DNA of 64,000 nucleotides from Mytilus edulis (lineage: Eukaryota). How positions within the stretch are numbered: the first letter of the stretch is position 1; each line of letters begins with the position of its first letter. This document shows positions 1,147-23,014 of the stretch, in pieces. The translations under genes and the position numbers were made by a program. Location: assembly GCF_963676685.1 (NCBI RefSeq), contig NC_092346.1:29822001-29886000 (forward strand), in the 5' to 3' direction. The notes under the pieces were generated by a model. The model ran no database searches. It saw nothing but the letters and a program-made list of their open reading frames with translations, and was not told the origin of the DNA.

Positions 1147-4100
1147 TGGTCTAATTTTGTCTACTAATGCATGTCCCTTGCTTTTTGTAACATTAAACTG
1201 TAGCTTGTTGAATTCATTGGCTACTCTTTCAATCAACTGCCCAGTCAGTGTTCTGCAAAGAAGTTGAATCATTTATAAAACTTAAAATCAAGATTACAAA
1301 AACCAAAAAAATTATTACAAGCCAAATTCTTCTAAAGTTTCCTTTTTGAATAGATACAGATTGATTGACCTCTGTTTGCTAAGGGGTAATTAGGTTATGC
1401 TATACAATTGAGTAAGTAAGTAAGTTAACAGAGATGAAAATAGGAAATTAGGACTGCAACTGGAAGACAAGAGGTCATTAACAGAACTTTCAAAAAGTAA
1501 TTGCAAGCATGGCAGTCTTTCAACATGGGATACACAATTTTTGCAATGACTCCTTCCTTTCAGGAGTTTCTTTACTTTGAATGTGCAGCTTTTTGATTGT
1601 AAAATGATTTTTTTAATACTGACCCAGTAGTGGACTCATTGTCTGAGATACCCAGTAGCTTCTCAATTTTCTCCACTGAGCTTATGATATTCATCAGCCT
1701 CTGTAAGCATGCCTGAAGCAGAAAAATATGTAGGCACATGTCATTCAAACCTATGTGATAAAATTATTTTTAGACAACATTTTGCATACTTTCATTTTAC
1801 ACTGAAAAAGTCTAATACTTGTACAAAGTTTATGAAATTAAATAATCAATTCTTACAAACCTTTCAGAATGAAAAGATGGAATTATTTATTTTACTTTGT
1901 TTTCATGACTTATTTCTAAGATCTAATAGTAAGGAAAATTAAAACCAACAATTAGTGAGAAACTGCTTCTTAATAAAAGGTATCAGTATTTAACCTTAGA
2001 CAACTTCACAAGATGTTTTTCTTCATTTTTTTAAAACCCTAATATGTGAAAAACATTTGCTATGGCACAAAGATAAAGATATACCAGTAGTTTAAAACAT
2101 ATACAATGGATGACAACTTTTTACACAATGGCCCCAAATTTTGTGTAACTTTTAAATTTATATACCTTTTTCTCCCTGATTTGCTCCCTTTGTTTAAGTT
2201 TTTCTTCAACAGCATGTACAGCTTCTTCCATTGCAACTTTCACAGTCTATATGAAAAGATATACAATAATTATATACCAATGTTAATTACAAACTAAAAA
2301 AATGCATATATATATAAATTCTGTTCCTGTTATTGAAAAGGGTTCAACACTTCAATAATTGTGTCAGCAGTGCTTCAAATTTTATTTCATACTTCAATGT
2401 TTAACATGTTTAAGTAAGTTATATAGTTAACATGGTTTAGAAGACAACTTCTTGTCATACATCCATAATAAACAAGTGAAACTGTGAGCTACAGTATAGC
2501 TGACTTATACATGTCATATAAACCCTGAAACCAAATTTCAGAAATCCTTGTACTGTAGTTCCTGAGAAATATGTGACAAAACATTTCAACTTGGATGTCA
2601 GGTGTAAAATGATGTAAGTGTTCGGTAAAAAGGAAATTGTTGAATGATAAGATACGAGAGTCACTGATGAGACTGTTTAGTAGACAAAACACAAGTCTGG
2701 TTTCAAAATTTTGTTTGCCTGCCCAGGTATCTAGGAGTTTTCTCTGAATTTAACATTACTTTGCAGCTATTATTCAAATAAATATTCAAATGTTTCACTT
2801 CTTCTCATCTTATCAGTCATAATCAACACTGAAAGAAGAAGAACATAGTACTTACCATAACTTGGTCTTTCATTTCTCCCAATGGCACTGTTAGATTAGT
2901 GATAGCTTTATCCATTCCAACCTGAAAAGATGCTCTAGATTGTACATGTATGTGATGTAAAAAAAAAAGACTCAATGTTTGCTTTAAAGAGAATGCCATG
3001 TTTACATGCATAATATACATAAAAAGTATACCATTTTTTCAACTAATAAATTCAAATGTAAGAATTCCAATAGAAAATTGTATCAAAGCTTTTATCACTG
3101 TGCACATGTTTGGTTTAAAATTTCCTTCCTATGATTTTTCATTTTTCATCAGGTTTAGTTGTTTAAGATATATTTTGTAAGACATGATATGATATTCCAA
3201 ATCTGTGTAAAGGATCAAAATGATACATTTTGAATAAATGCTATTGAATGACACATTTTTACTAATAATTTGTTTACCTTGAAAAATTTTGATGGAATGC
3301 CTATAATTGTTTGACAGTAATGTACATGTACAAAAATGTACATTCAAAGTTTAACTGCAAACCGACTTATTTTTCACTGGTACATTTTTTGCATTAATCT
3401 CTTTCTAAGTGATTTGATTTACTTTATGATTATTGTAACTTTGTTGATGTAGTCACAAAAGGGATGATATAATCTCCATTCCTTATACATTTGAACCTCT
3501 GGCTTACCAAAGAACCAACCATTCAATCAATTCATATTTGAAATGCCTAGTAAATCAACTATATATCTAGCAACAACCTTACCAAATTTGTAGATAAATT
3601 GACAAAATCAGCATAGTCTTTATTAATAAGTTCTATCATGGCACTGCGGAGTATTTTCAAGTAGGTGTTCAGGTCATCTCTCAATGTCTCTAGTGGTACT
3701 CTTCTCCTGCATTCCATCACAAAATTATCTACATCAAATCCATCCTGTAAATAAAAAGTGGCTCAAATCAGATTACTCCTGATAAAATTTGCAACCCTTC
3801 TCTCAAAGCTTGAAAAAGATTAAAAATGAAAGAACAATGTGTCTGAGGATACAAATGCCCCTGCTCATGCTTGAAATAAATGTTTTAAAAAATGTGACAT
3901 ATAGACTGAAAGATGGAAGGTCAAGGGTACACGTAATGCCCTGTCTCCTATGGTAGTATTGGCAGAGGCATACAAATTATTTTCTCTACATATCTGTACC
4001 TGTCAGACAACATTCAATAGCATATGAATTTTTGCATATAAATTATTTGTATATTGCATTACCGAAATGTATAATGATGAGTAGAACAAACTGGAATCCA

Positions 4101-6177: not shown

Positions 6178-6424
6178 GGTCCCAACTTGTTTTGCACTGC
6201 TGGCAGGACGGGGAATAACTCTTGGCATAACCGGATGTAAATTCGTTGCTCAAACTAAAAACCCAAAACTCATTCAATGGAGTGTAGACAAACACCTTTT
6301 TTTTTACTTAAAAAAATATATATACTCAGAGAAACAGATGATTTAATATTTGAAAACTTCTTTCATCCGCTAATGTTTCGTATTTAAACAATGTGACACA
6401 TGATCATAACTTTATTCTTTGAGT

Positions 6425-6569
6425 AAAATGAAAGTCTACTCGGAATTCTTCAGGATTTTTCTTCTTTAAATCAAAACGAAAGTAGGGAATTCCCAAAAAA
6501 TATAACCACTTGTCTCGTGAGTCACAGAAAATAAAAACAAGAGTCCAACTTGAGCTCAAGGACACAAGT
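6425..6569 (+). promoter_or_regulatory. Putative immune-inducible promoter and non-coding exon 1 of the TIR-like/death-domain gene, divergent from COG2
   Basis: IRF-like AAAATGAAAGT (6425-6435) and AAAACGAAAGT (6473-6483); perfect palindromic kB site GGGAATTCCC (6485-6494); TATAA (6501-6505); AP-1 TGAGTCA (6518-6524); splice donor AA/GTAAGA at 6568. Confidence 0.6.
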
Positions 6570-7186
6570 AAGATATATAGAGTTATTTTCATTTTTGAAG
6601 ATTATTCAAATATGTGGTTTGCATTTGATGACACTGTCATAGACATCTTAATTTGCCTTTAAAAACAGAGACATAGCGACTTCTTCCCCCTAATCCCATG
6701 TGACACGAATTGCTTTTTTTCGGGATGGGCATGGATCATAATAATCCATTTCGGATATTATAGTTTAAATGGGGTATATATTTTTAATGCAAAATATATC
6801 ATTTTGTAATCAAGCAAAGCTATTTTCACTGCATTTGTTTAGAATAACTACAATATAGAAATTTTGGTAGGCAACTTTGCCAGAAAATGAATTAGTTGCA
6901 AAATTGTTTCATTCGAAAATCCAGGGAATCAAACTCATCAACATTCTGGTACATATAATAGAAATAAGTTGCTGATTAAAAGTTTTTGCATTTATTAAAT
7001 AAATTATATACTTAGCAAACTTCAATGTGCAGTAGTGCACACATAAAACATGCACCTGATCTCTTCCAAATTATTTCACACTAGAGTTGTTTATTTACCT
7101 TACTATGAATGTTTGTTTTAATACTTGCAGCCAAAGATTTTTGAAAAGGCTGGTTAAAAGGGTATGAAAACACTGCAAGAGTAAAG

Positions 7187-10100
7187 ATGGAGATAATTTG
7201 TTCATGTCATGAAGCTACCAGTAGAAGAGTAAAGCATATACAAGAGATTTGTACAGGAAAGGATATATCTGTAACTGTTAGGCAGTGTAGAGGTATGTAT
7301 TGTTAAGTTTTTTAAGTGGCAAAACTGTAATTTCAAATGTGTAGGTTTTTATTCCCCTTTTGCATGCTTTCTTTCTGTTCATATTTTCTAAATCTCTAAC
7401 AATGGAGTGTAAGAAAAAAATCTTATTTTTGGCATCTCTTTAAAAATCATTTGACAGAAATTGTGAAATAGTTTTGCAGATCATGATTTTGCCATATGTT
7501 CTATTGCTATTTTGTTTGCTATCTTGTCAATTACAGATTAACTCTATAAAAATTGCCTGGTCAAATTTAAACCAAACTTATTACAAAAAGTCCTTGCAAT
7601 ATACATGTTGAGCTGAAAATTTTGTATTTATAAAAGTAGTCACCTTTTTTTATAAGTAATGAATTATTTGGTCTCACAAAACATATACTTTTTTGTATTT
7701 TTTATTTATAGGAGTGATTATTTGTATTTTTACCAATAGCAAAATCAAACTTTATTTTTCAGGAATTGAAGATGCTAAAAAGTTGGAAGTAGATGTAAAT
7801 AAATGTTGTGTGCTCATACTAGATGATGAATTGGTTGACTTATTAGAAAGTTGTGGAAAACTTGTTGCCAAAATACTAAGTATGAATGGTGGATTTTAGA
7901 CTTGTAACAAGGGTGAATTATGGGAAAGGGCACTTATCATTTTATCCTTCAGTTTATTGGATGTTTATTGGTTATTCTCTTTTTCTTTTAATCAGATCTT
8001 CAGAAACGACCACTAACTATCATATTTTATTTACAGTGTTTAATTTAAACTCCCTTAATTTGCAATTAATTCTGAAAAAATCTTGAAAATGAAATTTAAA
8101 AGTGTTTACATCATTTCAAAACAGAGTTTATAAAGAAATGATTAGAAAAAGCACATATAAACCCTTCAAAGAGCTTTTTTTTATGAATATGGCCAATCAT
8201 CAATAGAACTGAGTAGCCTAACAACACAATGGAAAACCAATGAAAAGTCATCTAGATTCCAGTCTTCCAAGATAACAAAATTTATGAATCCAACCACATT
8301 TAGGCCCTGGGTACAACTTATATGTTATTTGTTTTAAAAAATATAAAGTAAAAATATATTTTCTGTCAATGCATGTACATGTACTATGATTTTTCCAGTC
8401 CTGAAAAGTAATTTTTATTAGCCTGCTTTCATTTGCTATATCGGAAATTTGAAATTGTTGCCAATTCTTAACTTTGATTCATTTTGATGATTGCTATCAA
8501 TATTAATTTGAAATTTCGCCGTATTGTGGTCTATTTTGACCTACAATCTATACTTTTCAGGGATGACATCCAAGCCTAACAAGTTGATATATTTCAAAGT
8601 TGTTACTGATGAAAAGATGGAAATGTTTGCAACTGACGAATGTGAATGGAGACGATGTGTTAACTCTGAGGAGGAACTGATCAAAATTTATACAACGAAA
8701 ATATGTAAATCTCCGACAGAGTCTGATGGTAGGTACAGAAAATATTTTAATGAAAAAAAAACGTTCAGTTCTTTTAAACATTAAATGATTTAATTTTAAT
8801 GTATGAAGAAATTTATGACCTGTATACCAGCAGTGAGAGATGAGAAAAATTTAAATGGAAACAGTAAGGAAGAATTTTAGATTTGAGTTCTGGTGTGGTG
8901 ATTTAGATATTGCTTTAAAATTGTTGTGTTGTTTATTTGTTGAAACTTATTCACAAGTTTTTGTTTTGAATTGAGGGAGTCAAAAAACGGCATAATTTAT
9001 CACAATTTTTTTTAAAGAAAAATGTACATTTAACAGTAAGGCCAAGGGATTTGCGTCATACCAATACATCTAGTTGATTATTACATCACCATGTTCCAAC
9101 TTTTTCTGTCATTTAAACATAGATTTATTTAAGAACAGAGTTGGGGTAAATGTTTTTGATTTTTTCATATGTTATATTCTTTCACAATTTCAGAAACAAC
9201 AAATACATGTCAAACAATGCAGTCACTGAGCTTGCAGAGTGCAGAGCCTTTGTCCAATTCGTCTTTTACAAATGAACCAGCTGTGAACCAGTCATTGAAA
9301 ATTACTCATGCAAGTATGTATCTGCAAAGTTTGTCAATATTGTGGATTCATCATTATTTGTTGGATATCAATCTCGAGGATCACAATAGATGAACCACAA
9401 ATTAGAAATGTTTCAACGAAGTATAAATTTAATTTATGCTTGTATGCAGACTATGGCAAAACAACTAAATCAAATATTCACAAAAATGGTACTTAGAAAT
9501 AGATAAATCCACAATGTAGTAACATTAAACAAGTGAATATCATGTTTTTGTAAAATTGGTTAATATTGTGTGTTATAAGTCTGATTATCTCCCTTGACTT
9601 TCTGGGAACTTTGTATTAATTTGTTTCAAAGAATAGAAATTTTTGGTGTCCATGTTGATTTGCATTTATTTTTGTAGGACCAGAAGCTGTAGAAAGTAGA
9701 CATTCATTCTCCAGTGGTGATGACAATCATGATGAGAAACAATGCCAGAATGACTTAAAAGGGCAAGCTGTGGAGGGAGATATTCAAAAGTCAAAGAGTG
9801 AACAAAATCTTGGTATGTTCATACATTTGATTAGCTGATATTGTGTGTAAATCTAGTACAATGCAGATTTGTATTCATGTCCCATTAACATTTATTTATG
9901 ATTTGCCACTGGACTCTATTAAAAGAGCCATCCTTTATCATCCTGATCACAGATGTCTAGTCAGTCAAACTTCATTACAGCTTCTTCAGTTCTGATGATT
10001 TTTGCATTAAATAGCAGTATCTGTTAGAAGATCAATAAGTTTTCCTAAAAATACATGTACATGTGTTGTCTACAATCTCATCTTCAAATTTTAAAACCAG

Positions 10101-13100
10101 AAAAAGCAAAGTCCATGTTTTGATATTGGAAACATCAAAAAATCATTCAGATCTCAAATTAAAATAGACAATACACAACACAATGTCCATTAGAAGAATC
10201 TGTACAATTTTGAGGGAATTTTGGTAAGCTATTTTAGTAGTTGTGGATTAATTAACTTACTGATACATTAAATGGGTTTTACTCATTGTTGAAGGTCTTA
10301 ATACCGTCTTATGGTGACCTGTAGTTGTTAATTTCTGTGTCATTTGGTGTCTTAGATTAAGCCGTTACATTTTGGATTACAATGATGTGCCATCAAACGG
10401 TAGATAAAATTGACGCAAATTCCTACTACATCATTTTTGATTGATTGCAGCACTTGAACTCTCTTCAATGTAGAGGTGAAAAAATAATTGTGTCTGTTGT
10501 TTTCAAATAGAAAAATATACGTTGAAATTTCAACATTTCAGCTAAAAGGATACCCAGGAATTTTTATTAGCAGATAAAGAACTTTGAAATTGTCACTAAA
10601 CATCATCCTATTTTTAGCTCACCTGGCCCGAAGGGCCAAGTGAGCTTTTCCCATCACTTGGTGTCCAGTCATGGGCGATGGAGTCTGGACGCCATGGCTA
10701 AAAATAGAACATAGGGGTAAAATGCAGTTTTTGGCTTATAACTCAAAAACCAAAGCATTTAGAGCAAATCTGACATGGGGTAAAATTGTTTATTAGGTCA
10801 AGATCTATCTGCCTTCAAATTTTCAGATGAATCCGACAACCTGTTATTGGGTTGCTGCCCCTGAACTGGTAATTTTAGGGAATTTTTGCTGTTTTTGGCT
10901 ATTATCTTGAATATTATTATAGATAGAGATAAACTGTAAACAGCAATAATGTTCAGCAAAGTAAGATTTACAAATAAGTCAACATGACCAAAATGGTCAG
11001 TTGACCCCTTTAGGAGTTATTGACCTTTATAGTCAATTTTTAATCATTTTTCGTAAATCTTAGTAATCTTTTACAAAAATCTTCTCCTTTGAAACTACTG
11101 GGCCAAATTAATCCAAACTGGGCCACAATCATCTTTGGGATATCTTGTTTGAAAAATGTGTGGCCTGACCCGGCCAACCAACCAAGATGGCCACCATGGC
11201 TAAAAATAGAACATAGGGGTAAAATGCAGTTTATGGCTTATAACTCAAAAACAAAGCTTTTAGAGCAAATCTGACATGCGGTAAAAGTGTTTATTAGGTC
11301 AAGATCTATCTGTCCTGATGTTTTCACATGGATCGGACAACCAGTTGTTAGGTTACTGTCCTGAATTGGTAATTTTAAGGAAATTTTGCCGTTTTTATAC
11401 GACCGCAAAAATTTTAATTTTTTGGTCGTATATTGCTATCACGTTGGCGTCGTCGTCGTCGTCGTCGTTGTTGTCCGAATACTTTTAGTTTTCGCACTCT
11501 AACTTTAGTAAAAGTGAATAGAAATCAATGAAATTTTAACACAAGGTTTATGACCACAAAAGGAAGGTCGGGATTGATTTTTGGAGTTGAGGTCACAACA
11601 GTTTATGAATTAGGGGCCAAAAAGGGGCCCAAATAAGCATTATTTTTGGTTTTCGCACAATAACTTTAGTATAAGTAAATAGAAATCCATGAAATTTATA
11701 CACAAGGTTTATGACCATAAAAGGAAGGTTTTATGACCACAAAAGGAAGGTTGGGTTTGATTTTGGGAGTTTTGGTCCCAACAGTTTAGGAATAAGGGGT
11801 CCAAAGGGTCCAAAATTGAACTTTGTGTGATTCATCAAAAATTGAATAATTGGGGTTCTTTGATATGTCGAATCTAACTATGTATGTAGATTCTTAATTT
11901 TTGGTCCCGTTTTCAAATTGGTCTACATTAAGGTCCAAAGGGTCCAAAATTAAACTTAGTTTGATTTTAACAAAAATTGAATCCTTGGAGTTCTTTGATA
12001 TGCTGAATTTAAAAATGTAATTAGATTTTTAATTATTGGCCTAGTTTTCAAGTTGGTCCAAATGGGGGTCCAAAATTATACTTTGTTTGATTTCATCAAA
12101 AATTGAATAAATGGGTTCTTTGATATGCCAAATCTAACTGTGTATGTAGATTCTTAATCTTTAGTCCAGTTTTCAAATTGGTCTACATTAAGGTCCAAAG
12201 GGTCCAAAATTAAACTAAGTTTGATTTTAACAAAAATTAAATTCTTTGGCTTATTTGATATGCTTTATCTAAATATGTACTTTGATTTTTGATTATGGGC
12301 CCAGTTTTCAAGTTGGTCCAAATCAGGATTCCATATCAAGTATTGTGCAATAGCAAGATATTTTCAATTGCACAGTATTGTGCAATAGCAATTAATTTTC
12401 AATTGGAGTTATCTTTCTTTGTATAGAATAGTAGTTGATAATATATGTTGGAAATTTGCCAGACATGACTATGATGTCATTTTGTATTTTTATTTGCCAA
12501 TAACTTTATGTAAATAACTTCATTGGAAATTTGCCAATATAAAATGTTGCTGATGAAGCTTTTTTTCCTTATCTTATCTAAAATGTTTTTAGATAATGTA
12601 TGTTGGACATTTGCCAGACATGACTATGATGTCATTTTCTATTTTTATTTGCCAATAACTTTATGTAAATAACTTCATTGGAAATTTGCCAATATAAAAT
12701 GTTGCTGATGAAGTTTTTTTTATTGTTTTATACAATAAACAATGTATATTCACTTTTACTACCAACCAATCTTTACCATTCAGTGATAACAAGCACTTTA
12801 TTTTACATTTTAATATTTTATGATGTATTTAAAAGAGTTGTTATTGTTGCAAACTCCATTAGAAATTTGAATTGATATCAGTTTTGAAAAAAGGGAAACG
12901 GGGATGTGAAAAAAAAGGGGGAGGGGGTTTAAATTTTTCTCATTTCAGATTTCATAAATAAAAAGAAAATTTCTTCAAACATTTTTTTGAGAAGATTAAT
13001 ATTCAACAGCATAGTGAATTGCTCAAAGGCAATAAAAAAACTTTTAAGTTCATTAGACCACATTCATTCTGTGTCAGAAACCTATGCTGTGTCAACTATT

Positions 13101-16100
13101 TCATTTTAAATTTAAAAAGTTTGAAGAAGAAATCTTTAATTGATTTGTAAAATCTTGACATTTGTTTTGTGTAAAACAAAACCATGTAATGTCAAAAATT
13201 TGATCACAATCCAAATTCAGAGCTGTATCACGCTTGAATGTTTTGTCCATACTTGCCCCAACTGTTCAGGGTTCGACCTCTGCGGTCGTATAAAGCTGTG
13301 CCCTGTGGAGCACCTGGTTTGTTATTATCTTGAATATTATTATAGATAGAGATAAACTGTATACAGCAATAACATTCAGCAAAATAAGATCTACAAATAA
13401 GTTTGCATGACCAAAATAGTCAATTGACCCCTTAAGGAGTTATTGCCCTTTATAGTTAATTTTTATACGACCGCAAAAATTTTAATTTTTTGGTCGTATA
13501 TTGCTATCACGTTGGCTTCGTCGTCTGCGTCGTCGTCATCGTCGTCGTCGTCCGAATACTTTTAGTTTTCGCACTCTAACTTTAGTAAAAGTGAATAGAA
13601 ATCAATGAAATTTAAACACAAGGTTTATGACCACAAAAGGAAGGTTGGGATTGATTTTGGGAGTTTTGGTCCCAACATTTTAGGAATTAAGGGCCAAAAA
13701 TGGTCCAAATAAGCATTTTCTTTGTTTTCGCACTATAACTTTAGTTTAAGTGAATAGAAATCTATGAAATTTTGACACAAGGTTTATGACCACAAAAGGA
13801 AGGTTGGGATTGATTTTGGGAGTTTTGGTTCCAACAGTTTAGGAATTAAGGGCCAAAAAAGGGCCCAAATAAGCATTATTCTTGGTTTTCGCACTATAAC
13901 TTTAGTATAAGTATATAGAAATCAATGAAATTTTAACACAAGGTTTATGACCATAAAAGGAAGGTTGGGTTTAATTTTGGGAGTTTTGGTCCTAACAGTT
14001 TAGGAATAAGGGGCCCAAAGGGTCCAAAATTGAACTTTGTGTGATTTCATCAAAAATTGAATAATTGGGGTTCTTTGATATGCCGAATCTAACTATGTAT
14101 GTAGATTCTTAATTTTTGGTCCCGTTTTCAAATTGGTCTACATTAAGGTCCAAAGGGTCCAAAATTAAACTTAGTTTGATTTTAACAAAAATTGAATCCT
14201 CGGGGTTCTTTGATATGCTGAATTTAAAAATGTACTTAGATTTTTAATTATTGGCCTAGTTTTCAAGTTGGTCCAAATGGGGGTCCAAAATTAAACTTTG
14301 TTTGATTTCATCAAAAATTGAATCAATGGGTTCTTTGATATGCCAAATCTAACTGTGTATGTAGATTCTTAATTTTTGGTCCAGTTTTCAAATTGGTCTA
14401 CATTAAGGTCCAAAGGGTCCAAAATTAAACTAAGTTTGATTTTAACAAAAATTAAATTCTTGGGCTTATTTGATATGCTTTATCTAAATATGTACTTTGA
14501 TTTTTGATTATGGGCCCAGTTTTCAAGTTGGTCCAAATCAGGATTCCATATCAAGTATTGTGCAATAGCAAGATATTTTCAATTGCACAGTATTGCACAA
14601 TAGCAAGAAATATCTAATTGCACAATATTGTGCAATAGCAATTAATTTTCAATTGGAGTTATCTTTCTTTGTATAGAATAGTTGATAATATATGTTGGAA
14701 ATTTGCCAGACATGACTATGATGTCATTTTGTATTTTTATTTGCCAATAACTTTATGTAAATAACTTCATTGGAAATTTGCCAATATAAAATGTTGCTGA
14801 TGAAGCTTTTTTTCCTTATCTTATCTAAAATGTTTTTATACGACCGCAAAATTTGAAAAAAATTTCGTCGTATATTGCTATCACGTTGGCGTCGGCGTTG
14901 TCGTCGTCGTCCTGCGTCCGAATACTTTTAGTTTTCGCACTCTAACTTTAGTAAAAGTGAATAGAAATCTATGAAATTTAAACACAAGGTTTATGACCAC
15001 AAAAGGAAGGTTGGGATTGATTTTGGGAGTTTTGGTCCCAACATTTTAGGAATTAGGGGCCAAAAAGGGCCCAAATAAGCATTTTCTTGGTTTTCGCACT
15101 ATAACTTTAGTTGAAGTGAATAGAAATCTATGAAATTTTGACACAAGGTTTATGACCACTAAAGAAAGGTTGGGATTGATTTTGGGAGTTTTGGTTCCAA
15201 CAGTTTAGGAATTAGGGGCCAAAAAAGGGCCCAAATAAGCATTATAACCTTGGTTTTTGCACAATAACTTTAGTTTAAGTAAATAGAAATCAATGAAATT
15301 TAAACACAATGTTTATGACCACAAAAGGAAGGTTGGTATTGATTTTGGGAGTTTTGGTCCCAACAGTTTAGGAATAAAGGGCCCAAAGGGTCCAAAATTA
15401 AACTTTGTTTGATTTCATCAAAAATTGAATAATTGGGGTTCTTTGATATGCCGAATCTAACTGTGTATGTAGATTCTTAATTTTTGGTCCCGTTTTCAAA
15501 TTGGTCTACATTAAGGTCCAAAGGGTCCAAAATTAAACTTGGTTTGATTTTAACAAAAATTGAATCCTTGGGGTTCTTTGATATGCTGAATCTAAAAATG
15601 TACTTAGATTTTTAATTATTGGCCCAGTTTTCAAGTTGGTCCAAATCGGGGTCCAAAATTAAACTTTGTTTGATTTCATCAAAAATTGAATAATTGGGGT
15701 TCTTTGATATGCCAAATCTAACTGTGTATGTAGATTCTTAATTTTTGGTCCCGTTTTAAAATTGGTCTACATTAAAGTCCAAAGGGTCCAAAATTAAACT
15801 AATTTTGATTTTAACAAAAATTGAATTCTTGGGACTCTTTGATATGCTGAATCTAAACATGTACTTAGATTTTTGATTATAGGCCCAGTTTTCAAGTTGG
15901 TCCAAATCAGGATCCAAAATTATTATATTAAGTATTGTGCAATAGCAAGAAATTTTCAATTGCACGGTATTCAGCAATAGCAAGAAATCTTCAATTGCAC
16001 AGTATTGTGCAATAGCAAGAAATCTTCAATTGCACAGTATTGTGCAATAGCAAATATTTTCAATTGCACAGTATTGCACAATAGCAAGAAATATCTAATT

Positions 16101-19100
16101 GCAAAATATTGTGCAATAGCAAGAAATTCCAATTGGATTTCAATTGGAGTTATCTTTCTTTGTCCAGAATAGTAGTTGAATCAACTTAAATCATTGTTTT
16201 ATACAATATACAATGTATATTCACTTTTACTACCAACTGATAGATTAAAACAATCTTTACCATTTAGTAATAACAAGCACTTTTTTTACATTTTAATATT
16301 TTATGATGTATTTAAATGAGTAGTTATTGTTGCAAACTTCATTAGAAATTTGAATTGAGATCAGTTTTGAAATAAGGGAAAGGGGGATGTGAAAAAAAAA
16401 TTTGGGGGTCAATTTTTTTCATTTCAGATTTCATAAATAAAAAGAAAATTTCTTCAAACATTTTTTTGAGAGGATTAATATTCAACAGCATAGTGAATTG
16501 TTCAAAGGCAAACATATTTTTTTTAAGTTCATTAGACCACATTCATTCTGTGTCAGAAACCTATGCTTTGTCAACTATTTAATCACAATCCAAATTTAGA
16601 GCTGAATCCAGCTTGAATGTTGTGTCCATACTTGCCCCAACCGTTCAGGGTTCAACCTCTGCGGTCGTATAAAGCTGCGCCCTGCGGAGCATCTGGTTAG
16701 ATAATGTATGTTGGACATTTGCCAGACATGACTATGATGTCATTTTCTATTTTTATTTGCCAATAACTTTATGTAAATAACTTCATTGGAAATTTGCCAA
16801 TATAAAATGTTGCTGATGAAGTTTTTTTTATTGTTTTATACAATAAACAATGTATATTCACTTTTACTACCAACCAATCTTTACCATTCAGTGATAACAA
16901 GCACTTTATTTTACATTTTAATATTTTATGATGTATTTGAAAGAGTAGTTATTGTTGCAAACTCCATTAGAAATTTGAATTGATATCAGTTTTGGAAAAA
17001 GGGAAACGGGGATGTGATAAAAAAAGGGGGGGGTTAAATTTTTCTCATTTCAGATTTCATAAATAAAAAGAAAATTTCTTCAAACATTTTTTTTAGAGGG
17101 TTAATATTCCACAGCATAGTGAATTGCTCAAAGGCAAAAAAAACTTTTAAGTTCATTAGACCACATTCATTCTGTGTCAGAAACCTATGCTGTGTCAACT
17201 ATTTGATTTTAGATTTAAAAAGTTTGAAGAAGAAATCTTTAATTGATTTGTAAAATCTTGACATTTGTTTTGTGTAAAAAAAAAAACATGTAATGTCAAA
17301 AATTTGATCACAATCCAAATTCAGAGCTGTATCATGCTTGAATGTTTTGTCCATACTTGCCCCAACTGTTCAGGGTTCGACCTCTGCGGTCGTATAAAGC
17401 TGCGCCCTGCGGAGCACCTGGTTAACATTTTTCATAAATTTTTGTAAATTTGTAGAAAATATTTTTCACTGTAATTACTGGGCCAAGTTCATTATAGACA
17501 GAGATAATTGTAGCAACAAGAATGTTCAGTAAAGTTAGATCTACAAACACATCACTATCACCAAAACACAGTTATGTCATAAATTTATCCGTGTCCATTA
17601 TTTAATATGCACAAGACCAAGGTGAGCGACACAGGCTCTTTAGAGCCTCTAGTTTTTTAGGAGAATCGTTTTTGCACAATCGGTTTGTGGCAATTGTTTA
17701 TTTACATTTTCTACATTTACACGTCATCATCTTAAAGGTGCTTTTTGACTGGATGCAGTCAGGTACAATTGCAACTAATGAATATCATTACCTCATGGGT
17801 CCTAAATTCTATCAGCCATGGGTGGTCCCCGTGGAGAGAAAGGGACTAGATTGTAACCATTGGCTAGCAAAGATGTAAATGCATATATGTAAATTAAGTT
17901 TTCATATTTTTTTTCAGGTTTCTCAGTTAGTTTACCAGAAAACAAAAAGAATAATAATGAACACAAAGAAGACAGGAAAAGTTTACCAAATGATTTACAG
18001 AGTTTTTCTACAAACAACTTATATCCAAGGTTGAGTGGAATGTCATCATATGTTGAAGCTGGAATGTCATATGGCAATGCACAGTCACATAGCAATTTGC
18101 CAACACATTGTCATTTAGAGTCACACAGTCAATTACAGTCCCCAACCCTTAATAGACCATTACAACCTTGGTCTTCTATGAATGGATGTAGCTTTAACTC
18201 ATCTGGTCCTCAAGCTTTGACTTGTCAGAGTGGCCAGGGGTACAGTTGTCGTTGCGGTTCATGCCAAACGCTGCATCAACACTCTGCAAGTTTTCCTCAG
18301 TTCCATACCTTACAGCCAAAATCTATAGCAGGCAGTTCCACTGGCAGACCTGATACAACCAATAACATGAACTTTAGACCAGAGATAATTGCCATCAACA
18401 GAGGTTTTAGACCAACATATAGTCCTAATATACAGACAGATGGATCAGGTTTGCAAATTAGCATTTTAAAACAACTGCATTCTGGGTAATCCTTTCAATT
18501 TGAGTAAAAATAATTAAAATTGTGATTGTTGATAAACAGTATATAGGTACAGTGAAATTAAAGCCAATGACATGGCATTTTTTGAATCAGTGTAATATAC
18601 TTCAAGTGAGATTTGCAACTCGATTAAAAGGCTTGATTATTTTCTTGAAATATCATATGGGTCTTTCATTATTTTTGCACACTACTTTTCACCTTCTGAT
18701 ATATTTCTTATGCTGTAAGATTTTCCTATGTATTTTCGAAATTGTTTAGATAATCTTAAAATTAAGAATGAAAGATAATAGGTATCTTACAAAAAATAGT
18801 AATAAATCAAACGTAATTTGTTCAAATTAACTGTGTTTTTGTCAATGTTTTTTTTTTTAAAGAATTGTAAAGGAAGGACAGAGAAAGTACATGTAATCAA
18901 ATATCTTAGTTAACTAGCTCTGTAAATTCATAAAGAATAGCGCCTTCCTCTTATTAAGAAAAAAATATGTTTTTGTTTCTTATTTCAGATAACAGGACCT
19001 TTTCATGTGACCAATGTGGACATTCTGTTATCCCAAAACATGAAATGGTAATTATTCATAGTCGTTTATAACACTTTATTGCAATTGTTCTCTTCAACCA

Positions 19101-21509
19101 TGTAAGTCTTACTGAGATATTGCATTAGATATGCTACAAAAAAATAAGATTAAAAAAATATAAGATGTAGGACATATTGTTATTAGACCATCTTTACTGT
19201 GGCTTTTGTATATAGGCTTTGTTTCTCCATCATGAACATTTTGTACTTTCAATCAAGGCCCAAGAAATTGGTATGCAACAATTTGTTTTAAATTGAGACA
19301 CCCATTTTATCCTGACACATCATATACATTTTTTTTTAAAATGAGACACCCATTTTATCCTAATACATCATATTGTTTTCTGGTTTTTTTTCTACTTGTA
19401 TGTTTTATTTTGCAGAAAATAATGATTTATTTAAGATTTTAATTGAAGAGATCTTGTTTTTTTTCTTCATTTTTTAATAATTTTCTATACATTTATAACA
19501 ACAGTCTTTATCCATTAATTTTTCCAAAACTATGCTATTGTATATGTACTTTTTAAATGTTTCAAATTTTGCATTTTCAGAGTGATGTTGGACCTTCATG
19601 TGAGACTAATTATCATTCTGCTGGTATGTTTTGTCAATTTTTTTTTTTGGATGAAAATTGGATGTTCTATTTAAACATAAATAGTACCAAGGGAAGGCAC
19701 TTTCAAATGGGAAAATTTCATCTACAATTTCACTTTAGTTCACACAAACCCATAGTTGAGGTATTAAATTGTCTCCCCAGGGTCCAGTGTATGTTTTAAT
19801 GGGGGGAAAAAAATCCATAAAAATTGATCACTTGGATTGCTGGAAAGTATGCCAAAGTAAACGGCTCACTTTAAGATCAACACCTGACTCCCTGAAAAAT
19901 GAAGACATACAAACAACAACAAACTGCAACAAAAACAACACAACCATTTAAATAGACAATAATAGTGCATTGACTTGACATATCAACAATATAAGGATGA
20001 GGCTTAGAAACGGGGAAATGCGAGGCTCTGCCGAACTATTTTCTCGTTTCGGGCTGAATCCTTATATTGTATATATGTCGACTCAATGTATTATTATTGT
20101 CTTTATACTGCAATCTAAAAAAAAAAACATTTTCAATTGTTGTTTAATGTGTTAATGTTATTTATTTGGTTTAAATATTGGGGGAAATACCCCTATAAAA
20201 AGACCTCATATCATGCAGGCTGAGAAATATATAACACAATGAAATGTAAATAACCTGTTGAAACCCACAATCGATGGTGAACGAATTCGTTTGAGTATGG
20301 ACTAAAATATCAACAATAAGCATACAGCTTAATGATTTATAGGTTGCAAACAAAAAATATTAACAAGTGAAATATGTTTTTTCCAAAAATTGTAAAAGAA
20401 ACAAGTTTGAGTCTTTCCGCGCATCATTGTATGCATTGGAAACAAGAACAGGTTGAAGAGGTTGTATGAATAATTAAATAAAAATGTATAATTTTGGAAA
20501 CTTCTATTTAAGTATTCATGAGGAAAAGTTATATCGGGTCAGTGACTGTATATGACATAGAAATATACAGCCAATGCATTTTGACTGCTCAAATAGAAGG
20601 AGTGCAGTACAAAAGCTATTAAGAGTCTTGACATATTATGACTTCAATTTTTGAACCCTGGAATTCAAAAATTATATTGAATTTATCTTTTACATCTTGT
20701 ATGCCAATTGTTATTCACCTTGTAGACTCTTATAGAAATTGCATGTTTATGAAATAAAAGTAATACATGTTATACGAATGCTTTTCAGATTAATTGAATA
20801 TGACACATGTTTTTGACCTCTATTTCATTAATAAAATTCTGCACTGCATTAAATCAAGGATTTATATACAAAGATTAACTACTATAGTTGTTCCAGTTTC
20901 AGTATCTATAATGAGCGATTGGTCAACTGTATTTTATTTGATTTATGGGCTGATGTTTTGTCTTTTCATTGCTTTTTGGTTTTTACCTGACTTTATGGAT
21001 TTGAGTGTCCCTTTAGTTTCTTTCGCTTCTCTTTCTTATCGTATCTATAGAATCTTAGCAAGATGTACACATTTCTCATTACGTGAATAAGCATATATGC
21101 TGATGTTATAAAATGTGAATTTCACCGTAAAAGTTATAAGTATCTAATGTTTATTTATTTAGGTGGTGCCTCAGGTATGACTGAAAAAGAATACATGAAT
21201 CCCGACAAAATCAGTGTATTGGAATTAAAGGAAGCAGTTATGGTAATGATAAGAGACACCCTGGATTGTTCTGATTATTACAACTGGAAGAAACTTGCTG
21301 ACCTCCATAAATGGTCCTTTGGTAGAATATACCAACTTGAACAAAAATGGAAGAGTCGTAAAATTGAGAGTCCTTTCATGCATCTGATTGAAGAATTCCA
21401 GCATTACACATTACTAGATCTGAAGGAAGACTTGAAACAAATCCCAAGAAAAGATCTGCTGCACAAAATTGAGGAACTTCAAAGTAAAGGATTGTTGTTC
21501 CATAATTAG
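7187..21509 (+). CDS. 541-aa protein: N-terminal TIR-like domain, Ser/Gln/Asn-rich linker, C-terminal death domain (putative innate-immune adaptor)
   Basis: Exons 7187-7292, 7763-7879, 8561-8728, 9194-9313, 9678-9812, 17918-18448, 18989-19047, 19581-19623, 21163-21509. All GT-AG, phases join into one 1626-nt ORF, with an in-frame upstream stop at 7142. The last exon (NWKKLADLHKW...SPFMHLIEEFQHYTLLDLKEDLKQIPRKDLL) has a death-domain pattern. The TIR call is a by-eye fold inference. Confidence 0.85.
9338..9516. mobile_element. Degenerate Tc1/mariner-type MITE (TGTGGATTCAT...ATCCACA); related copies at ~255-310 and 24430-24780
   Basis: Imperfect inverted termini shared among three copies in the window. 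Confidence 0.5.
11394..13318 (+). mobile_element. HINE family 2, copy 1, with (GTC)n microsatellite and internal satellite-like arrays
   Basis: Begins TTTATACGACCGCA, ends TGCGGTCGTATAAAG...GAGCACCTGGTT. Host sequence resumes exactly as in the uninterrupted host repeat at ~10885-10940. Confidence 0.8.
13462..17422 (+). mobile_element. HINE family 2, copy 2 (contains copy 3)
   Basis: Same termini as copy 1; the empty host site is visible at ~11028-11057. Confidence 0.8.
14835..16697 (+). mobile_element. HINE family 2, copy 3, nested inside copy 2
   Basis: Same termini; the empty site TTATCTAAAATGTTTTTAGATAATG is preserved in copy 1 at ~12575-12600. Confidence 0.8.
19950..20610. mobile_element. 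Non-autonomous element with a ~155-bp terminal imperfect palindrome (Crypton-like, tentative)
   Basis: 19950-20105 folds back on itself (AGACAATAATA...CAATATAAGGAT / ATCCTTATATTG...TATTATTGTCT). The right boundary is approximate. Confidence 0.4.
21163..21509 (+). CDS. Terminal exon encoding the death domain
   Basis: Acceptor TTTAG at 21162. The pattern W-x-x-L-A...I..L...SP...L...T(L)..L...L..I.R.DLL is typical of MyD88/IRAK/IMD-type death domains. Confidence 0.85.
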
Positions 21510-23014
21510 ATCTGACACTTGTGCAAAAAATAAGGGAGATAATTTCAAATGTTCAACTTTCAAAAAGGTTTCAGATTTTGAATTTAAAGTTTCAGAACCT
21601 TGATATAGTATTGTAATGATGAAGAAAGCACTTGTTATATTTAAAATCCCAGTACGCATTTTCAGGGCTATATATCCCAGAAAATAGTTGTTATTTTACC
21701 TTACAAGGTTAATCATAACCCTTTGGAAAAAATTGGCCTTGTTTTACATCAAATTATTTATTCAGAGTACAGCCAAAAGTTTAAAAATACAGTTAACTTT
21801 AATACATACCTAGGTCCTGCTAGGCCTTATTTTTTTCCAGATTCACAAGGTTGTCTGTACTCAGAATAAATGTTGTGGTATAAACACAGCAATAACTGCT
21901 AAAGGGTTTAGAACCTTAATGTGCTTTTTCAGCATCTATATTTTGTAAATAGAAATTACATTATACATATACCTTCATTTGTATATTTTGTTTTCCTGCT
22001 TTGTGTAAAAATATCTATATGCATGATGATTTCGGGTTTGACCCTTTCGAGATACAGGAATTCTTTTTTTGAATTTCAGATTCTTGGGATTTCATGTTTT
22101 TAAGCCCGGTATTTTGGGATCAGGACCCCTCCTACTCCCCCTCATTCATGCCAAGAAAGAAAGGTCATTTTTTTTCTTTGACAGAAGTGTTTGTAGTAAA
22201 ATTATGATTGGCGAATAATGGTGATTGTAAGAAATTACACATAACTTTTGTTTGTATTTATTGATAGGGCACATTTATAATATATAGGGCTATTTCATTG
22301 CAAAAAATGCTCCTGGCCTTCTGATAAGGTCATGTGGTAGCAAACAGTCTTTTTCAAAACATCTTTATCATACTAGTCCCAGGATTTTTATTTTATACAT
22401 TACAATCATGACATAATATATTTTTATATGTGCATCAATTTTTTTAAGATATTTGATGTTAATTTTATTGAATTGAATAATTTTATCATCAAAGGTATAA
22501 AGTTAAAAAAAATTAAAATTTATTATTAAAGAGAATTTTATTGATATTGAAATCTATATTCATATAATATATCAAGTTACATGTAACATTTATACTAAAT
22601 ATCTTATATGAATATAGATTTCAATATCAATTGTAAATGAATCAAATGTAATTGAAATCAATTTTAATGCAAATTTCATTGAAATTGAATTCAATTTTTT
22701 TATGATATTTAGAGTTATTTTTTTGGAGGGAAATTGAAATAATTTTTTGTTTATCAAGGACAATTAGGGCAAATTTTGAAGTTTACACATGTGTTTTTAA
22801 TATTTCCTATAAAGGCGTGCAATAAAAGAAAACTGGTACTTGGAAGTTTACTATTGTTTATTGAAATTTGATATTCCAAAGGGGAAAAAGTAAAAATGCA
22901 TGTTTTATTCTTAAGGGAACCAGTCTCTACCTCTTTAATCCAATATTCCTTTTCACTGGCACTAGCATTATTTACTTGGCAAGCCATGAATATTAGATGT
23001 TTGAAATCTTATTT

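What the first reader, a model, noticed from the sequence alone, without database searches (positions are those of the whole stretch)
7187..21509. Hidden 'inverted MyD88' adaptor: TIR-like domain at the N-terminus, death domain at the C-terminus
Seen: nine small, phase-consistent exons, mostly missed by the ORF track, splice into a 541-aa ORF ending in a clear death domain. Inference: the first ~125 aa (MEIICSCH-helix-ISVTVRQ-helix-CCVLILD-DELVDLLE-LIYFKV-RRCVN-SEEELIKIY) alternate five short hydrophobic strands with helices, as in a divergent TIR/SEFIR (BCAP/BANK1-type) fold. Established: MyD88 is DD-then-TIR, while IMD and RIPK1 carry a C-terminal DD without a TIR. A TIR-linker-DD protein could bridge TIR receptors to DD kinases or caspase adaptors, or act as a decoy. 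Together with its promoter this is the best candidate here for an undescribed innate-immune signalling module.
Basis: partly seen in the sequence, partly recalled or inferred. Interest (0 to 1): 0.82.

Follow-up and report, generated by a model that had tools for sequence, protein, structure and literature searches.

The report
Mussel adaptor: TIR-like domain plus Death domain
This is a real, expressed blue-mussel gene. Its protein has a small N-terminal domain that models best as a cryptic TIR-type fold, a long floppy linker and a C-terminal Death domain; databases list it only as "uncharacterized", and its role in immunity is plausible but untested.

Summary
The nine-exon, 541-codon model is correct. 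Every exon translation is an exact piece, in order, of an NCBI protein annotated as "uncharacterized protein [Mytilus edulis]" (541 aa). RNA contigs from four studies show the first four coding junctions and an extra non-coding 5' exon. So the gene is not hidden, but its domains are unannotated.

Mussels, scallops and oysters share this architecture. Gastropod relatives have the Death domain without the N-terminal domain.

The scan also noted, on other DNA of this genome, a TIR-coiled coil-Death-CARD gene, so TIR before Death may not be unique here.

Verdict: observation confirmed, interpretation partly supported, a new variant of a known kind, function untested.

The parts
6485..6524 (+). Promoter-proximal motifs: GGGAATTCCC (NF-kB-type, 6485-6494), ATATAA (TATA-like, 6500-6505) and TGAGTCA (AP-1/TRE, 6518-6524). 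They lie 15-55 bp upstream of the first RNA-covered base.
   Evidence: Read from the sequence. RNA contig coverage starts at about 6539. These are motif matches only, with no functional evidence.
6539..6567 (+). Non-coding 5' exon (exon 0). The 5' end is approximate; the donor is aag|gtaaga after 6567.
   Evidence: Joint 6567->7131 (GT..AG) in runs X2 and X4, and 6560->7131 in X8.
7131..7292 (+). Exon 1: 5' UTR 7131-7186, ATG at 7187, residues 1-35 plus the first base of codon 36. It encodes strand 1 and helix 1 of the N-terminal domain.
   Evidence: joint 7292->7763 in X2 and X8.
7763..7879 (+). Exon 2, residues 36-75: the strand with the nearly invariant L55-D56, followed by helix 3.
   Evidence: joint 7879->8561 in X2, X6 and X8; conservation.
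8561..8728 (+). Exon 3, residues 75-131: the last strands and helices of the N-terminal domain (which ends at about residue 123) and the conserved P-T-E-S-D-E motif (residues 126-131, starting at 8713).
   Evidence: joint 8728->9194 in all four runs.
9194..9313 (+). Exon 4, residues 131-171, disordered linker.
   Evidence: joint 9313->9678 in all four runs.
9678..9812 (+). Exon 5, residues 171-216, linker with the conserved E-x-x-x-S-F-S-S-x-D motif.
   Evidence: Contig X2 record 4 (1098 nt) carries E2-E5 and runs on for 533 nt past this exon.
9813..17917 (+). Intron 5 (8.1 kb), filled with composite tandem-repeat elements.
17918..18448 (+). Exon 6, residues 216-393, disordered Q/S-rich linker. 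It holds the conserved SGPxAL motif (18202-18219), a CxxC (18253-18264) and the FRPEI...PNIQ...SDN motif. The donor is cag|gtttgc at 18448, not the ORF end at 18485.
   Evidence: Between 54 and 77% of its 31-mers are held by 14 small, RNA-like contig sets.
18989..19047 (+). Exon 7, residues 393-412, with a second CxxC (19006-19017).
19581..19623 (+). Exon 8, residues 413-427.
21163..21509 (+). Exon 9, residues 427-541 plus the stop: the GGASG motif and the Death domain (six helices, residues 450-534, at 21231-21485). The first AATAAA downstream is at 21865.

Best explanation
A single-copy, expressed Mytilus edulis gene encodes a cytosolic adaptor-type protein of 541 residues. Residues 1-123 form a (beta-alpha)5 domain, most likely a sequence-cryptic TIR-type domain without a conserved catalytic glutamate, so a docking module rather than an NADase. 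Residues 124-437 form a disordered linker that carries a few conserved short motifs. One is a TRAF6-consensus-like P-[ST]-E-x-[DE]-[DE] motif directly after the domain; another is an SGPxAL...CxxC element. Residues 440-535 form a Death domain of MyD88/IRAK/Pelle-like shape. The likely mechanism is scaffolding, and this part is inferred, not shown. The Death domain would join helical Death-domain oligomers, the N-terminal domain would dock on TIR assemblies or self-associate, and the linker would recruit downstream factors. The protein would therefore either couple or compete with Toll-type signalling. The architecture arose in pteriomorph bivalves, by adding the N-terminal module, encoded by exons bounded by phase-1 introns, to an older molluscan adaptor made of a disordered region and a C-terminal Death domain.
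For: Gene model and expression. P0030 is identical exon by exon. P0001/P0026 (533 aa) lie on contigs of 1672/1840 nt, P0033 on 2034 nt and P0032 on 2745 nt. These contigs are far shorter than the 14-kb, eight-intron locus, so they must be spliced transcripts, and each carries both domains in one ORF.

The gene is single copy in the 1.37-Gb genome.

Distribution: mussels, scallops (Ylistrum, Argopecten) and an oyster (Saccostrea) have both domains. Five gastropod genera have only the Death domain.

Motifs. Promoter motifs.
Against: No sequence-based method detects TIR. Pfam at E up to 10, PADLOC and NCBIfam gave nothing. hhalign of the N-domain profile against 28 TLR TIR domains of the same genome gave probability 0.9%. 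The profile against PDB sequences gave nothing.

The structural margin is small. Rows within 1 Z are ties, LacI/PBP half-domains reach 10.5 and receiver domains 9.3, and all Foldseek E-values are above 1e-3.

The alignment has only 10 sequences. The N-domain pLDDT is moderate in the mussel and low (50-75) in the scallop.

The Atlas search with the scallop N-domain gives CENP-M/GTPase-like and receiver-like neighbours, not TIR.

The BB-loop (box 2) motif is absent.

No binding partner, localisation or immune induction was tested. The TRAF6-like motif is six residues long and could be coincidental.

The E5/E6 junction was not observed directly in this species.
Confidence: 0.5

Rival explanations
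1. The gene and the C-terminal Death domain are the same, but the N-terminal domain is a generic flavodoxin-like module, not a TIR homologue. It could be receiver-like, a pseudo-GTPase of the CENP-M type, or a lineage-specific oligomerisation or ligand-binding domain. The protein would then be an IMD/EDARADD-style Death-domain adaptor with a bivalve-specific regulatory head, and it need not touch TIR signalling at all.
Against: TIR domains are the top natural matches in two AlphaFold models of orthologues only 25% identical, and in an independent ESM model. They cover about 90% of the TIR domain at 2.4-2.9 A. The receiver phospho-acceptor Asp pattern, flavin or cobalamin sites and the P-loop were not tested against the alignment, so neither the lack nor the presence of these motifs is shown. 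BCAP shows that genuine TIR domains can be invisible to sequence searches: it has 12% identity to the TLR2 TIR domain (PMC5241739).
Confidence: 0.35
2. The N-terminal domain is an enzymatically active TIR (an NAD+ hydrolase or cyclase), as in SARM1 and the bacterial TIR domains it resembles most. The protein would then be a Death-domain-controlled effector rather than a passive adaptor.
For: The closest structures are bacterial NAD+-consuming TIR domains: PdTIR, TcpB/BtpA, BtTir and AbTir.
Against: No glutamate is invariant inside residues 1-123. The candidate after strand 3 (E58/E64 in the mussel) is replaced in scallop, oyster and P0029. The only nearly invariant acidic residues inside the domain are D56 and E113. 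The equivalence of these positions to the catalytic Glu was judged from the alignment, not from a superposition.
Confidence: 0.07
3. The locus is two transcription units, with exons 0-5 and exons 6-9 separate, which annotation pipelines have merged.
Against: Four transcript-derived proteins of other mytilids carry both parts in one ORF, on contigs of 1.7-2.7 kb. Scallop and oyster proteins have the same two ends. Contig X2 record 4 continues 533 nt past exon 5, and exon 6 is 531 nt. Its match runs 2 nt over the exon end, and those two bases (gt) are also the first two of exon 6. The same run holds 70% of exon 6's words.
Confidence: 0.03

Closest known systems
MyD88 (Death domain - intermediate domain - TIR)
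   Different: The domain order is reversed. The linker is about 310 disordered residues instead of a short intermediate domain. The N-terminal domain has no detectable sequence similarity to canonical TIR domains. It is not a MyD88 family member.
BCAP/PIK3AP1 and BANK1 (N-terminal 'cryptic' TIR; PDB 5FOR)
   Different: No DBB/TIG domain, ankyrin repeats or coiled coil are present, since Pfam finds none and the model is disordered there. BCAP has no Death domain.
C-terminal Death-domain adaptors with a disordered N-terminal part (Drosophila IMD, vertebrate EDARADD)
   Same: The Death domain is C-terminal and is preceded by a long disordered region with short motifs. The gastropod relatives have exactly this layout.
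   Different: The bivalve proteins add a folded N-terminal domain. No RHIM-type core motif or caspase/IAP motif was recognised by eye. The family profile scores the RIPK1 Death domain only at E 0.16. Orthology to IMD or EDARADD was not tested.
Mussel TIR - coiled coil - Death - CARD gene noted elsewhere in this genome by the scan (s1-834638, s1-836988)
   Same: According to those notes it is another uncharacterized bivalve protein with TIR before Death.
   Different: That gene is said to have a recognisable TIR domain, a coiled coil, a CARD and a lipid anchor, and none of these is found here. I did not check those notes.

Membership tests
Death domain (death-fold superfamily, Pfam PF00531) | Six-helix antiparallel bundle of about 85-95 residues | tested here: met
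Death domain (death-fold superfamily, Pfam PF00531) | Sequence-profile match at the curated threshold | tested here: inconclusive
   The window's protein scores 15.6 bits (E 0.018) against a cut-off of 22.6. The relative P0012, which matches this exon at E 3e-7, scores 23.7 bits, above the cut-off. The family profile hits the p75NTR Death domain at E 4.7e-4 and almost only death-fold chains.
TIR domain superfamily | Three-layer alpha/beta/alpha fold with five parallel strands alternating with helices, about 125-160 residues | tested here: met
   The predicted (beta-alpha)5 domain spans residues 1-123. TIR domains are the top structural matches, with 113-122 residues aligned at 2.5-2.9 A. These are predicted models only, and the fold class is shared with receiver and flavodoxin domains.
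TIR domain superfamily | Profile similarity to TIR, TIR_2, TIR_3, SEFIR or ThsB-type models | tested here: not met
   Pfam (E up to 10), PADLOC and NCBIfam gave no hit for nine family members. hhalign against 28 TLR TIR domains of the same genome gave probability 0.9%. HHpred against the full Pfam/PDB profile libraries was not available.
TIR domain superfamily | Box 1 / box 2 (BB-loop RDxxPG) / box 3 motifs | tested here: not met
   There is only a box-1-like hydrophobic strand ending in a conserved Ser followed by acidic residues (I-I-C-S-x-x-E; S6 is nearly invariant). No BB-loop proline motif and no FW box were seen. BCAP also lacks close sequence similarity to other TIR domains (PMC5241739).
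TIR domain superfamily | TIR-TIR association (or NAD+ cleavage for enzymatic TIR domains) | not testable with these tools
   This needs binding or enzyme assays. No conserved catalytic Glu is seen in the alignment.
MyD88 family | N-terminal Death domain followed by a C-terminal canonical TIR domain | tested here: not met
   The order is reversed and the TIR-like domain is non-canonical.
BCAP/BANK1 family | Cryptic N-terminal TIR followed by a DBB/TIG domain, ankyrin repeats and a coiled coil | tested here: not met
   Only the first feature is matched, and only at fold level. Residues 124-437 are disordered and have no Pfam domain.
TRADD (TRADD-N domain + C-terminal Death domain) | N-terminal TRADD-N alpha/beta plait | tested here: not met
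   There is no Pfam TRADD_N hit and no TRADD-N structure among the 50 best rows of either wide search.

The most novel reading that the evidence does not exclude
Pteriomorph bivalves built a reverse-polarity counterpart of MyD88. A sequence-cryptic, non-enzymatic TIR domain was exon-shuffled onto an older molluscan Death-domain adaptor, together with a TRAF6-type motif and a small Cys-rich element. The protein plugs into Toll-receptor TIR assemblies with its head and into Myddosome-type Death-domain helices with its tail. It would then be either a second, MyD88-independent route to NF-kB or an inducible brake on it. The strongly polymorphic head exons would reflect selection at the receptor-facing surface.
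Probability: 0.25. Interest if true: 0.75.

Novelty: new variant of a known kind. Interest (0 to 1): 0.55.

Why it matters
Bivalves have more than a hundred Toll-like receptors; at least 150 TIR-matching loci were found in this genome. Few of their downstream adaptors are characterised. This protein is conserved and single-copy, and it pairs a Death domain with a TIR-type fold that domain scans cannot see. Repertoire studies that rely on Pfam or SMART would therefore miss it. If the head really is a TIR domain, it is a candidate missing link or regulator between TLRs and Death-domain kinases in molluscs. It would also be a second example, after BCAP, of a cryptic TIR. If the head is not a TIR domain, the protein is still an uncharacterised, lineage-specific Death-domain adaptor worth a functional test. 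It is not a new kind of system: both modules and the adaptor logic are known.

Tried and rejected
1. The joined (spliced) sequence was never built, searched or folded. I matched each exon by reference to the database protein P0030 and used that id instead.

The transcript contigs themselves and COG2 synteny in other species could therefore not be read.

3. The word search with the N-domain of P0001 and with the family alignment found no new relatives. The length window and word index limit this search, so it is no evidence of absence.

4. The full-length family profile against PDB sequences gave 0 hits. Only the Death-domain-only profile worked.

5. hhalign against the mussel's own TLR TIR domains gave nothing. 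PADLOC and NCBIfam gave nothing relevant.

6. The weak hits to DFF-C, TFIIF_beta, HemN_C and DUF7461, and the isolated weak PADLOC and NCBIfam hits, are treated as noise. All are far below their cut-offs where one is given, inconsistent between orthologues, or fall in low-complexity linker.

7. A RHIM core (I/V-Q-I/V/L/C-G) and a pLxIS motif were looked for by eye in the linker. 'PNIQTDG' and 'RHSFSS' do not fit either.

8. TRADD-N was rejected (see the membership test).

9. Complex prediction was not used. No mussel partner sequence was at hand by id, and a blank result would not have been informative.

10. Read laying was limited to one call of at most 6 kb, so only exons 0-5 were laid.

11. 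Literature searches found no description of this family or of a 'TIR-Death' adaptor. The key bivalve TIR-repertoire paper of 2017 (the source cited for ecTIR-DC in PMC6321704) was not among the search results, so I could not read it.

Full report
**Observation**

Reading the + strand between 7187 and 21509 gives nine exons with AG acceptors, GT donors and polypyrimidine tracts:
- E1 7187-7292
- E2 7763-7879
- E3 8561-8728
- E4 9194-9313
- E5 9678-9812
- E6 17918-18448
- E7 18989-19047
- E8 19581-19623
- E9 21163-21509

Their lengths sum to 1626 nt, which is 541 codons plus a stop. Introns 1-6 and intron 8 are phase 1 and intron 7 is phase 0. Exon 6 must end at the donor cag|gtttgc (18448), not at the end of its open frame.

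The big protein search with exon 9 alone and a word search returned P0030. This is a 541-aa protein that NCBI and UniRef call 'uncharacterized protein [Mytilus edulis]'. Each exon's in-frame translation is an exact substring of P0030, in order. The single residues between the blocks (G, R, E, R, G, D, none, G) equal the split codons read by hand. The gene is not hidden, but no database assigns it a domain: the precomputed Pfam column is empty.

**Expression**

Fourteen small contig sets (60-290 million letters, against 1.2-2.5 billion for the runs that look like DNA) hold 54-77% of exon 6's words. I laid four of them, from four studies and with the species label of the best DNA holder, on 6400-9950. 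Contigs lie only on exons, which shows that they are RNA.

They give GT..AG joints at 7292->7763, 7879->8561, 8728->9194 and 9313->9678. They also reveal a non-coding exon ending at 6567 that is spliced to 7131. Exon 1 therefore begins at 7131, and transcription starts near 6539.

Independent support for one transcript comes from other mytilids. P0001/P0026 (533 aa) sit on contigs of 1672 and 1840 nt, P0033 (520 aa) on 2034 nt and P0032 (519 aa) on 2745 nt. These contigs are far too short to hold introns, so they are spliced transcripts. They align collinearly to most or all of the nine exons. Both end domains are single-copy in the 1.37-Gb genome.

**C-terminal domain**

Pfam Death on this protein is sub-threshold (15.6 bits, E 0.018, cut-off 22.6). 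The same holds in most scanned relatives (11.9-20 bits, or no hit at all). The gastropod relative P0012 passes at 23.7 bits.

A profile of 14 short family members hits the p75NTR Death domain (E 4.7e-4), the FADD DED, the MyD88 Death domain (4.3e-3) and the ankyrin-G Death domain (6e-3). Among its 34 weak matches almost all are death-fold chains.

**N-terminal domain**

Residues 1-123 model as strand-helix repeated five times, with pLDDT 54-85 from an alignment of only 10 sequences.

Evidence for TIR in the mussel model:
- Foldseek's best hit is 5FOR, the BCAP 'cryptic TIR' (E 1.7e-3; its identity confirmed in PMC5241739). Bacterial TIR domains and receiver domains are interleaved below it, and nothing reaches E 1e-3.
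- The best non-TIR folds are LacI/periplasmic-binding half-domains at 10.5, and receiver domains score 9.4 or less.
- In the second look, all 14 best N-domain rows are TIR domains (12.3-9.9), receiver domains score 9.3 or less and SEFIR scores 8.8.
- The ESM Atlas's own model of this protein is nearest a bacterial TIR_2 cluster (TM 0.74; a receiver cluster reaches 0.68). Its language-model features point to TIR clusters at 0.85-0.89, which counts as a lead only.

Evidence from the scallop orthologue (25% identical):
- Its AlphaFold model is poorer (pLDDT 50-75), but TIR domains are again the best natural matches: PdTIR 10.7 over 127/136 residues and an RPS4/RRS1 TIR chain (4C6T_A) 10.5 over 135/141.
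- Its Atlas neighbours are CENP-M/GTPase-like by features, and receiver-like or B12-binding by structure, not TIR.

Sequence-based tests were all negative:
- Pfam at E up to 10, PADLOC and NCBIfam.
- hhalign of the N-domain profile against 28 TLR TIR domains taken from this genome, with probability 0.9%.
- The family profile against PDB sequences.

The alignment shows a box-1-like strand (I-I-C-S-x-x-E, with S6 nearly invariant) and a nearly invariant L55-D56 after strand 3. It shows no BB-loop motif and no invariant glutamate that could serve as an NADase catalytic residue.

My reading is that a flavodoxin-type alpha/beta domain is near certain. TIR is the single best assignment, at about one in two, and it is not proven.

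**Linker and distribution**

Residues 124-437 are predicted disordered, but they hold motifs conserved across bivalves:
- P-[ST]-E-x-[DE]-[DE] directly after the head. This fits the published TRAF6 consensus PxExx(aromatic/acidic), which I cite from my own knowledge and did not test.
- E-x-x-x-S-F-S-S-x-D.
- SGPxA[LM] followed by CxxC, often with a second CxxC.
- FRPEIL...PNIQ...SDN.
- GGASG just before the Death domain.

Head plus tail occurs in Mytilus edulis, M. californianus and three other mytilid transcript sets. It also occurs in the scallops Ylistrum balloti and Argopecten irradians, the oyster Saccostrea cucullata and one unnamed transcript.

The relatives in Haliotis, Gigantopelta, Biomphalaria, Aplysia and Nucella share the Death domain and a disordered N-terminal part. 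They have no head, no PxExx motif and no SGPxAL-CxxC element. The simplest history is that the head was added in bivalves. The phase-1 introns that bound its exons fit exon shuffling, which is an inference.

The Death domain is the most conserved part: 93% identity to M. californianus and 87% to P0001. Head exon 1 is 65% and 38% identical to the same two proteins.

**Surroundings**

Just upstream of the RNA start lie GGGAATTCCC (6485-6494), ATATAA (6500-6505) and TGAGTCA (6518-6524). These agree at motif level with the scan's separate promoter note. A COG2 exon lies on the opposite strand at 3562-3720, so the two genes are head to head.

**Mechanism and novelty**

Three things are shown: a transcribed gene, a Death domain, and a folded N-terminal alpha/beta domain that looks most like TIR. 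The rest is inferred. I infer a scaffold whose tail enters Death-domain oligomers and whose head docks on TIR assemblies or self-associates, and which couples or dampens Toll-type signalling.

The protein is not a member of the MyD88, BCAP or TRADD families, because defining features of each are not met. It resembles MyD88 in content and BCAP in having a cryptic N-terminal TIR-type domain.

The literature searches found no description of it. The scan's notes report another mussel gene with TIR before Death, a TIR-coiled coil-Death-CARD gene (not checked by me), so the domain order alone may not be unique.

I rate it a new variant of a known kind, with interest 0.55. It is a worthwhile, testable candidate adaptor that domain scans miss, but its function and the TIR assignment remain open.

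Noticed in passing
window 7187-8728 (exons 1-3) versus 9194-9812 (exons 4-5): The RNA contigs of four studies carry 24 variable sites in the head-domain exons and only 1 in exons 4-5. Twelve of the 25 are non-synonymous, and in exon 1 five of six are (I3L, S12C, R13S, H17Q, C22F). One run (X8) holds both a reference-identical and a divergent allele. This could be selection on the head surface or introgression between Mytilus species.
   Followed up: partly
window 11798-16135 (intron 5): Composite repeated elements with internal tandem arrays fill most of the 8.1-kb intron. The array periods are 135/260 bp, 159 bp and 35 bp, and the whole unit recurs three times.
   Followed up: partly
window 9336-9488 (intron 4): A short repeat attracts many unrelated RNA contigs (summed depth 134-588) with loose ends on both sides. 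It is probably a transcribed dispersed element, not part of this gene.
   Followed up: no
window 6485-6524: A perfect palindromic NF-kB-type site (GGGAATTCCC), a TATA-like ATATAA and an AP-1 site (TGAGTCA) lie within 55 bp upstream of the first RNA-covered base, about 6539. This is motif-level only. It overlaps the scan's separate promoter note s1-836246.
   Followed up: partly
window 3562-3720, - strand: An exon encodes the COG2 N-terminal domain (Pfam COG2_N, E 4.4e-18). COG2 is therefore the divergent, head-to-head neighbour.
   Followed up: partly
window 18202-18264 and 19006-19017: A conserved SGPxAL motif is followed by CxxC, and a second CxxC(G)H lies in exon 7. The element is present in all bivalve members and absent from the gastropod relatives. 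It may be a small zinc-binding element that AlphaFold leaves unmodelled.
   Followed up: partly
G000, genome-wide (loci L003-L032): At least 150 loci match Pfam TIR above the cut-off, mostly in long open frames of 700-900 aa typical of intronless Toll-like receptor genes, and many lie in tandem clusters.
   Followed up: no
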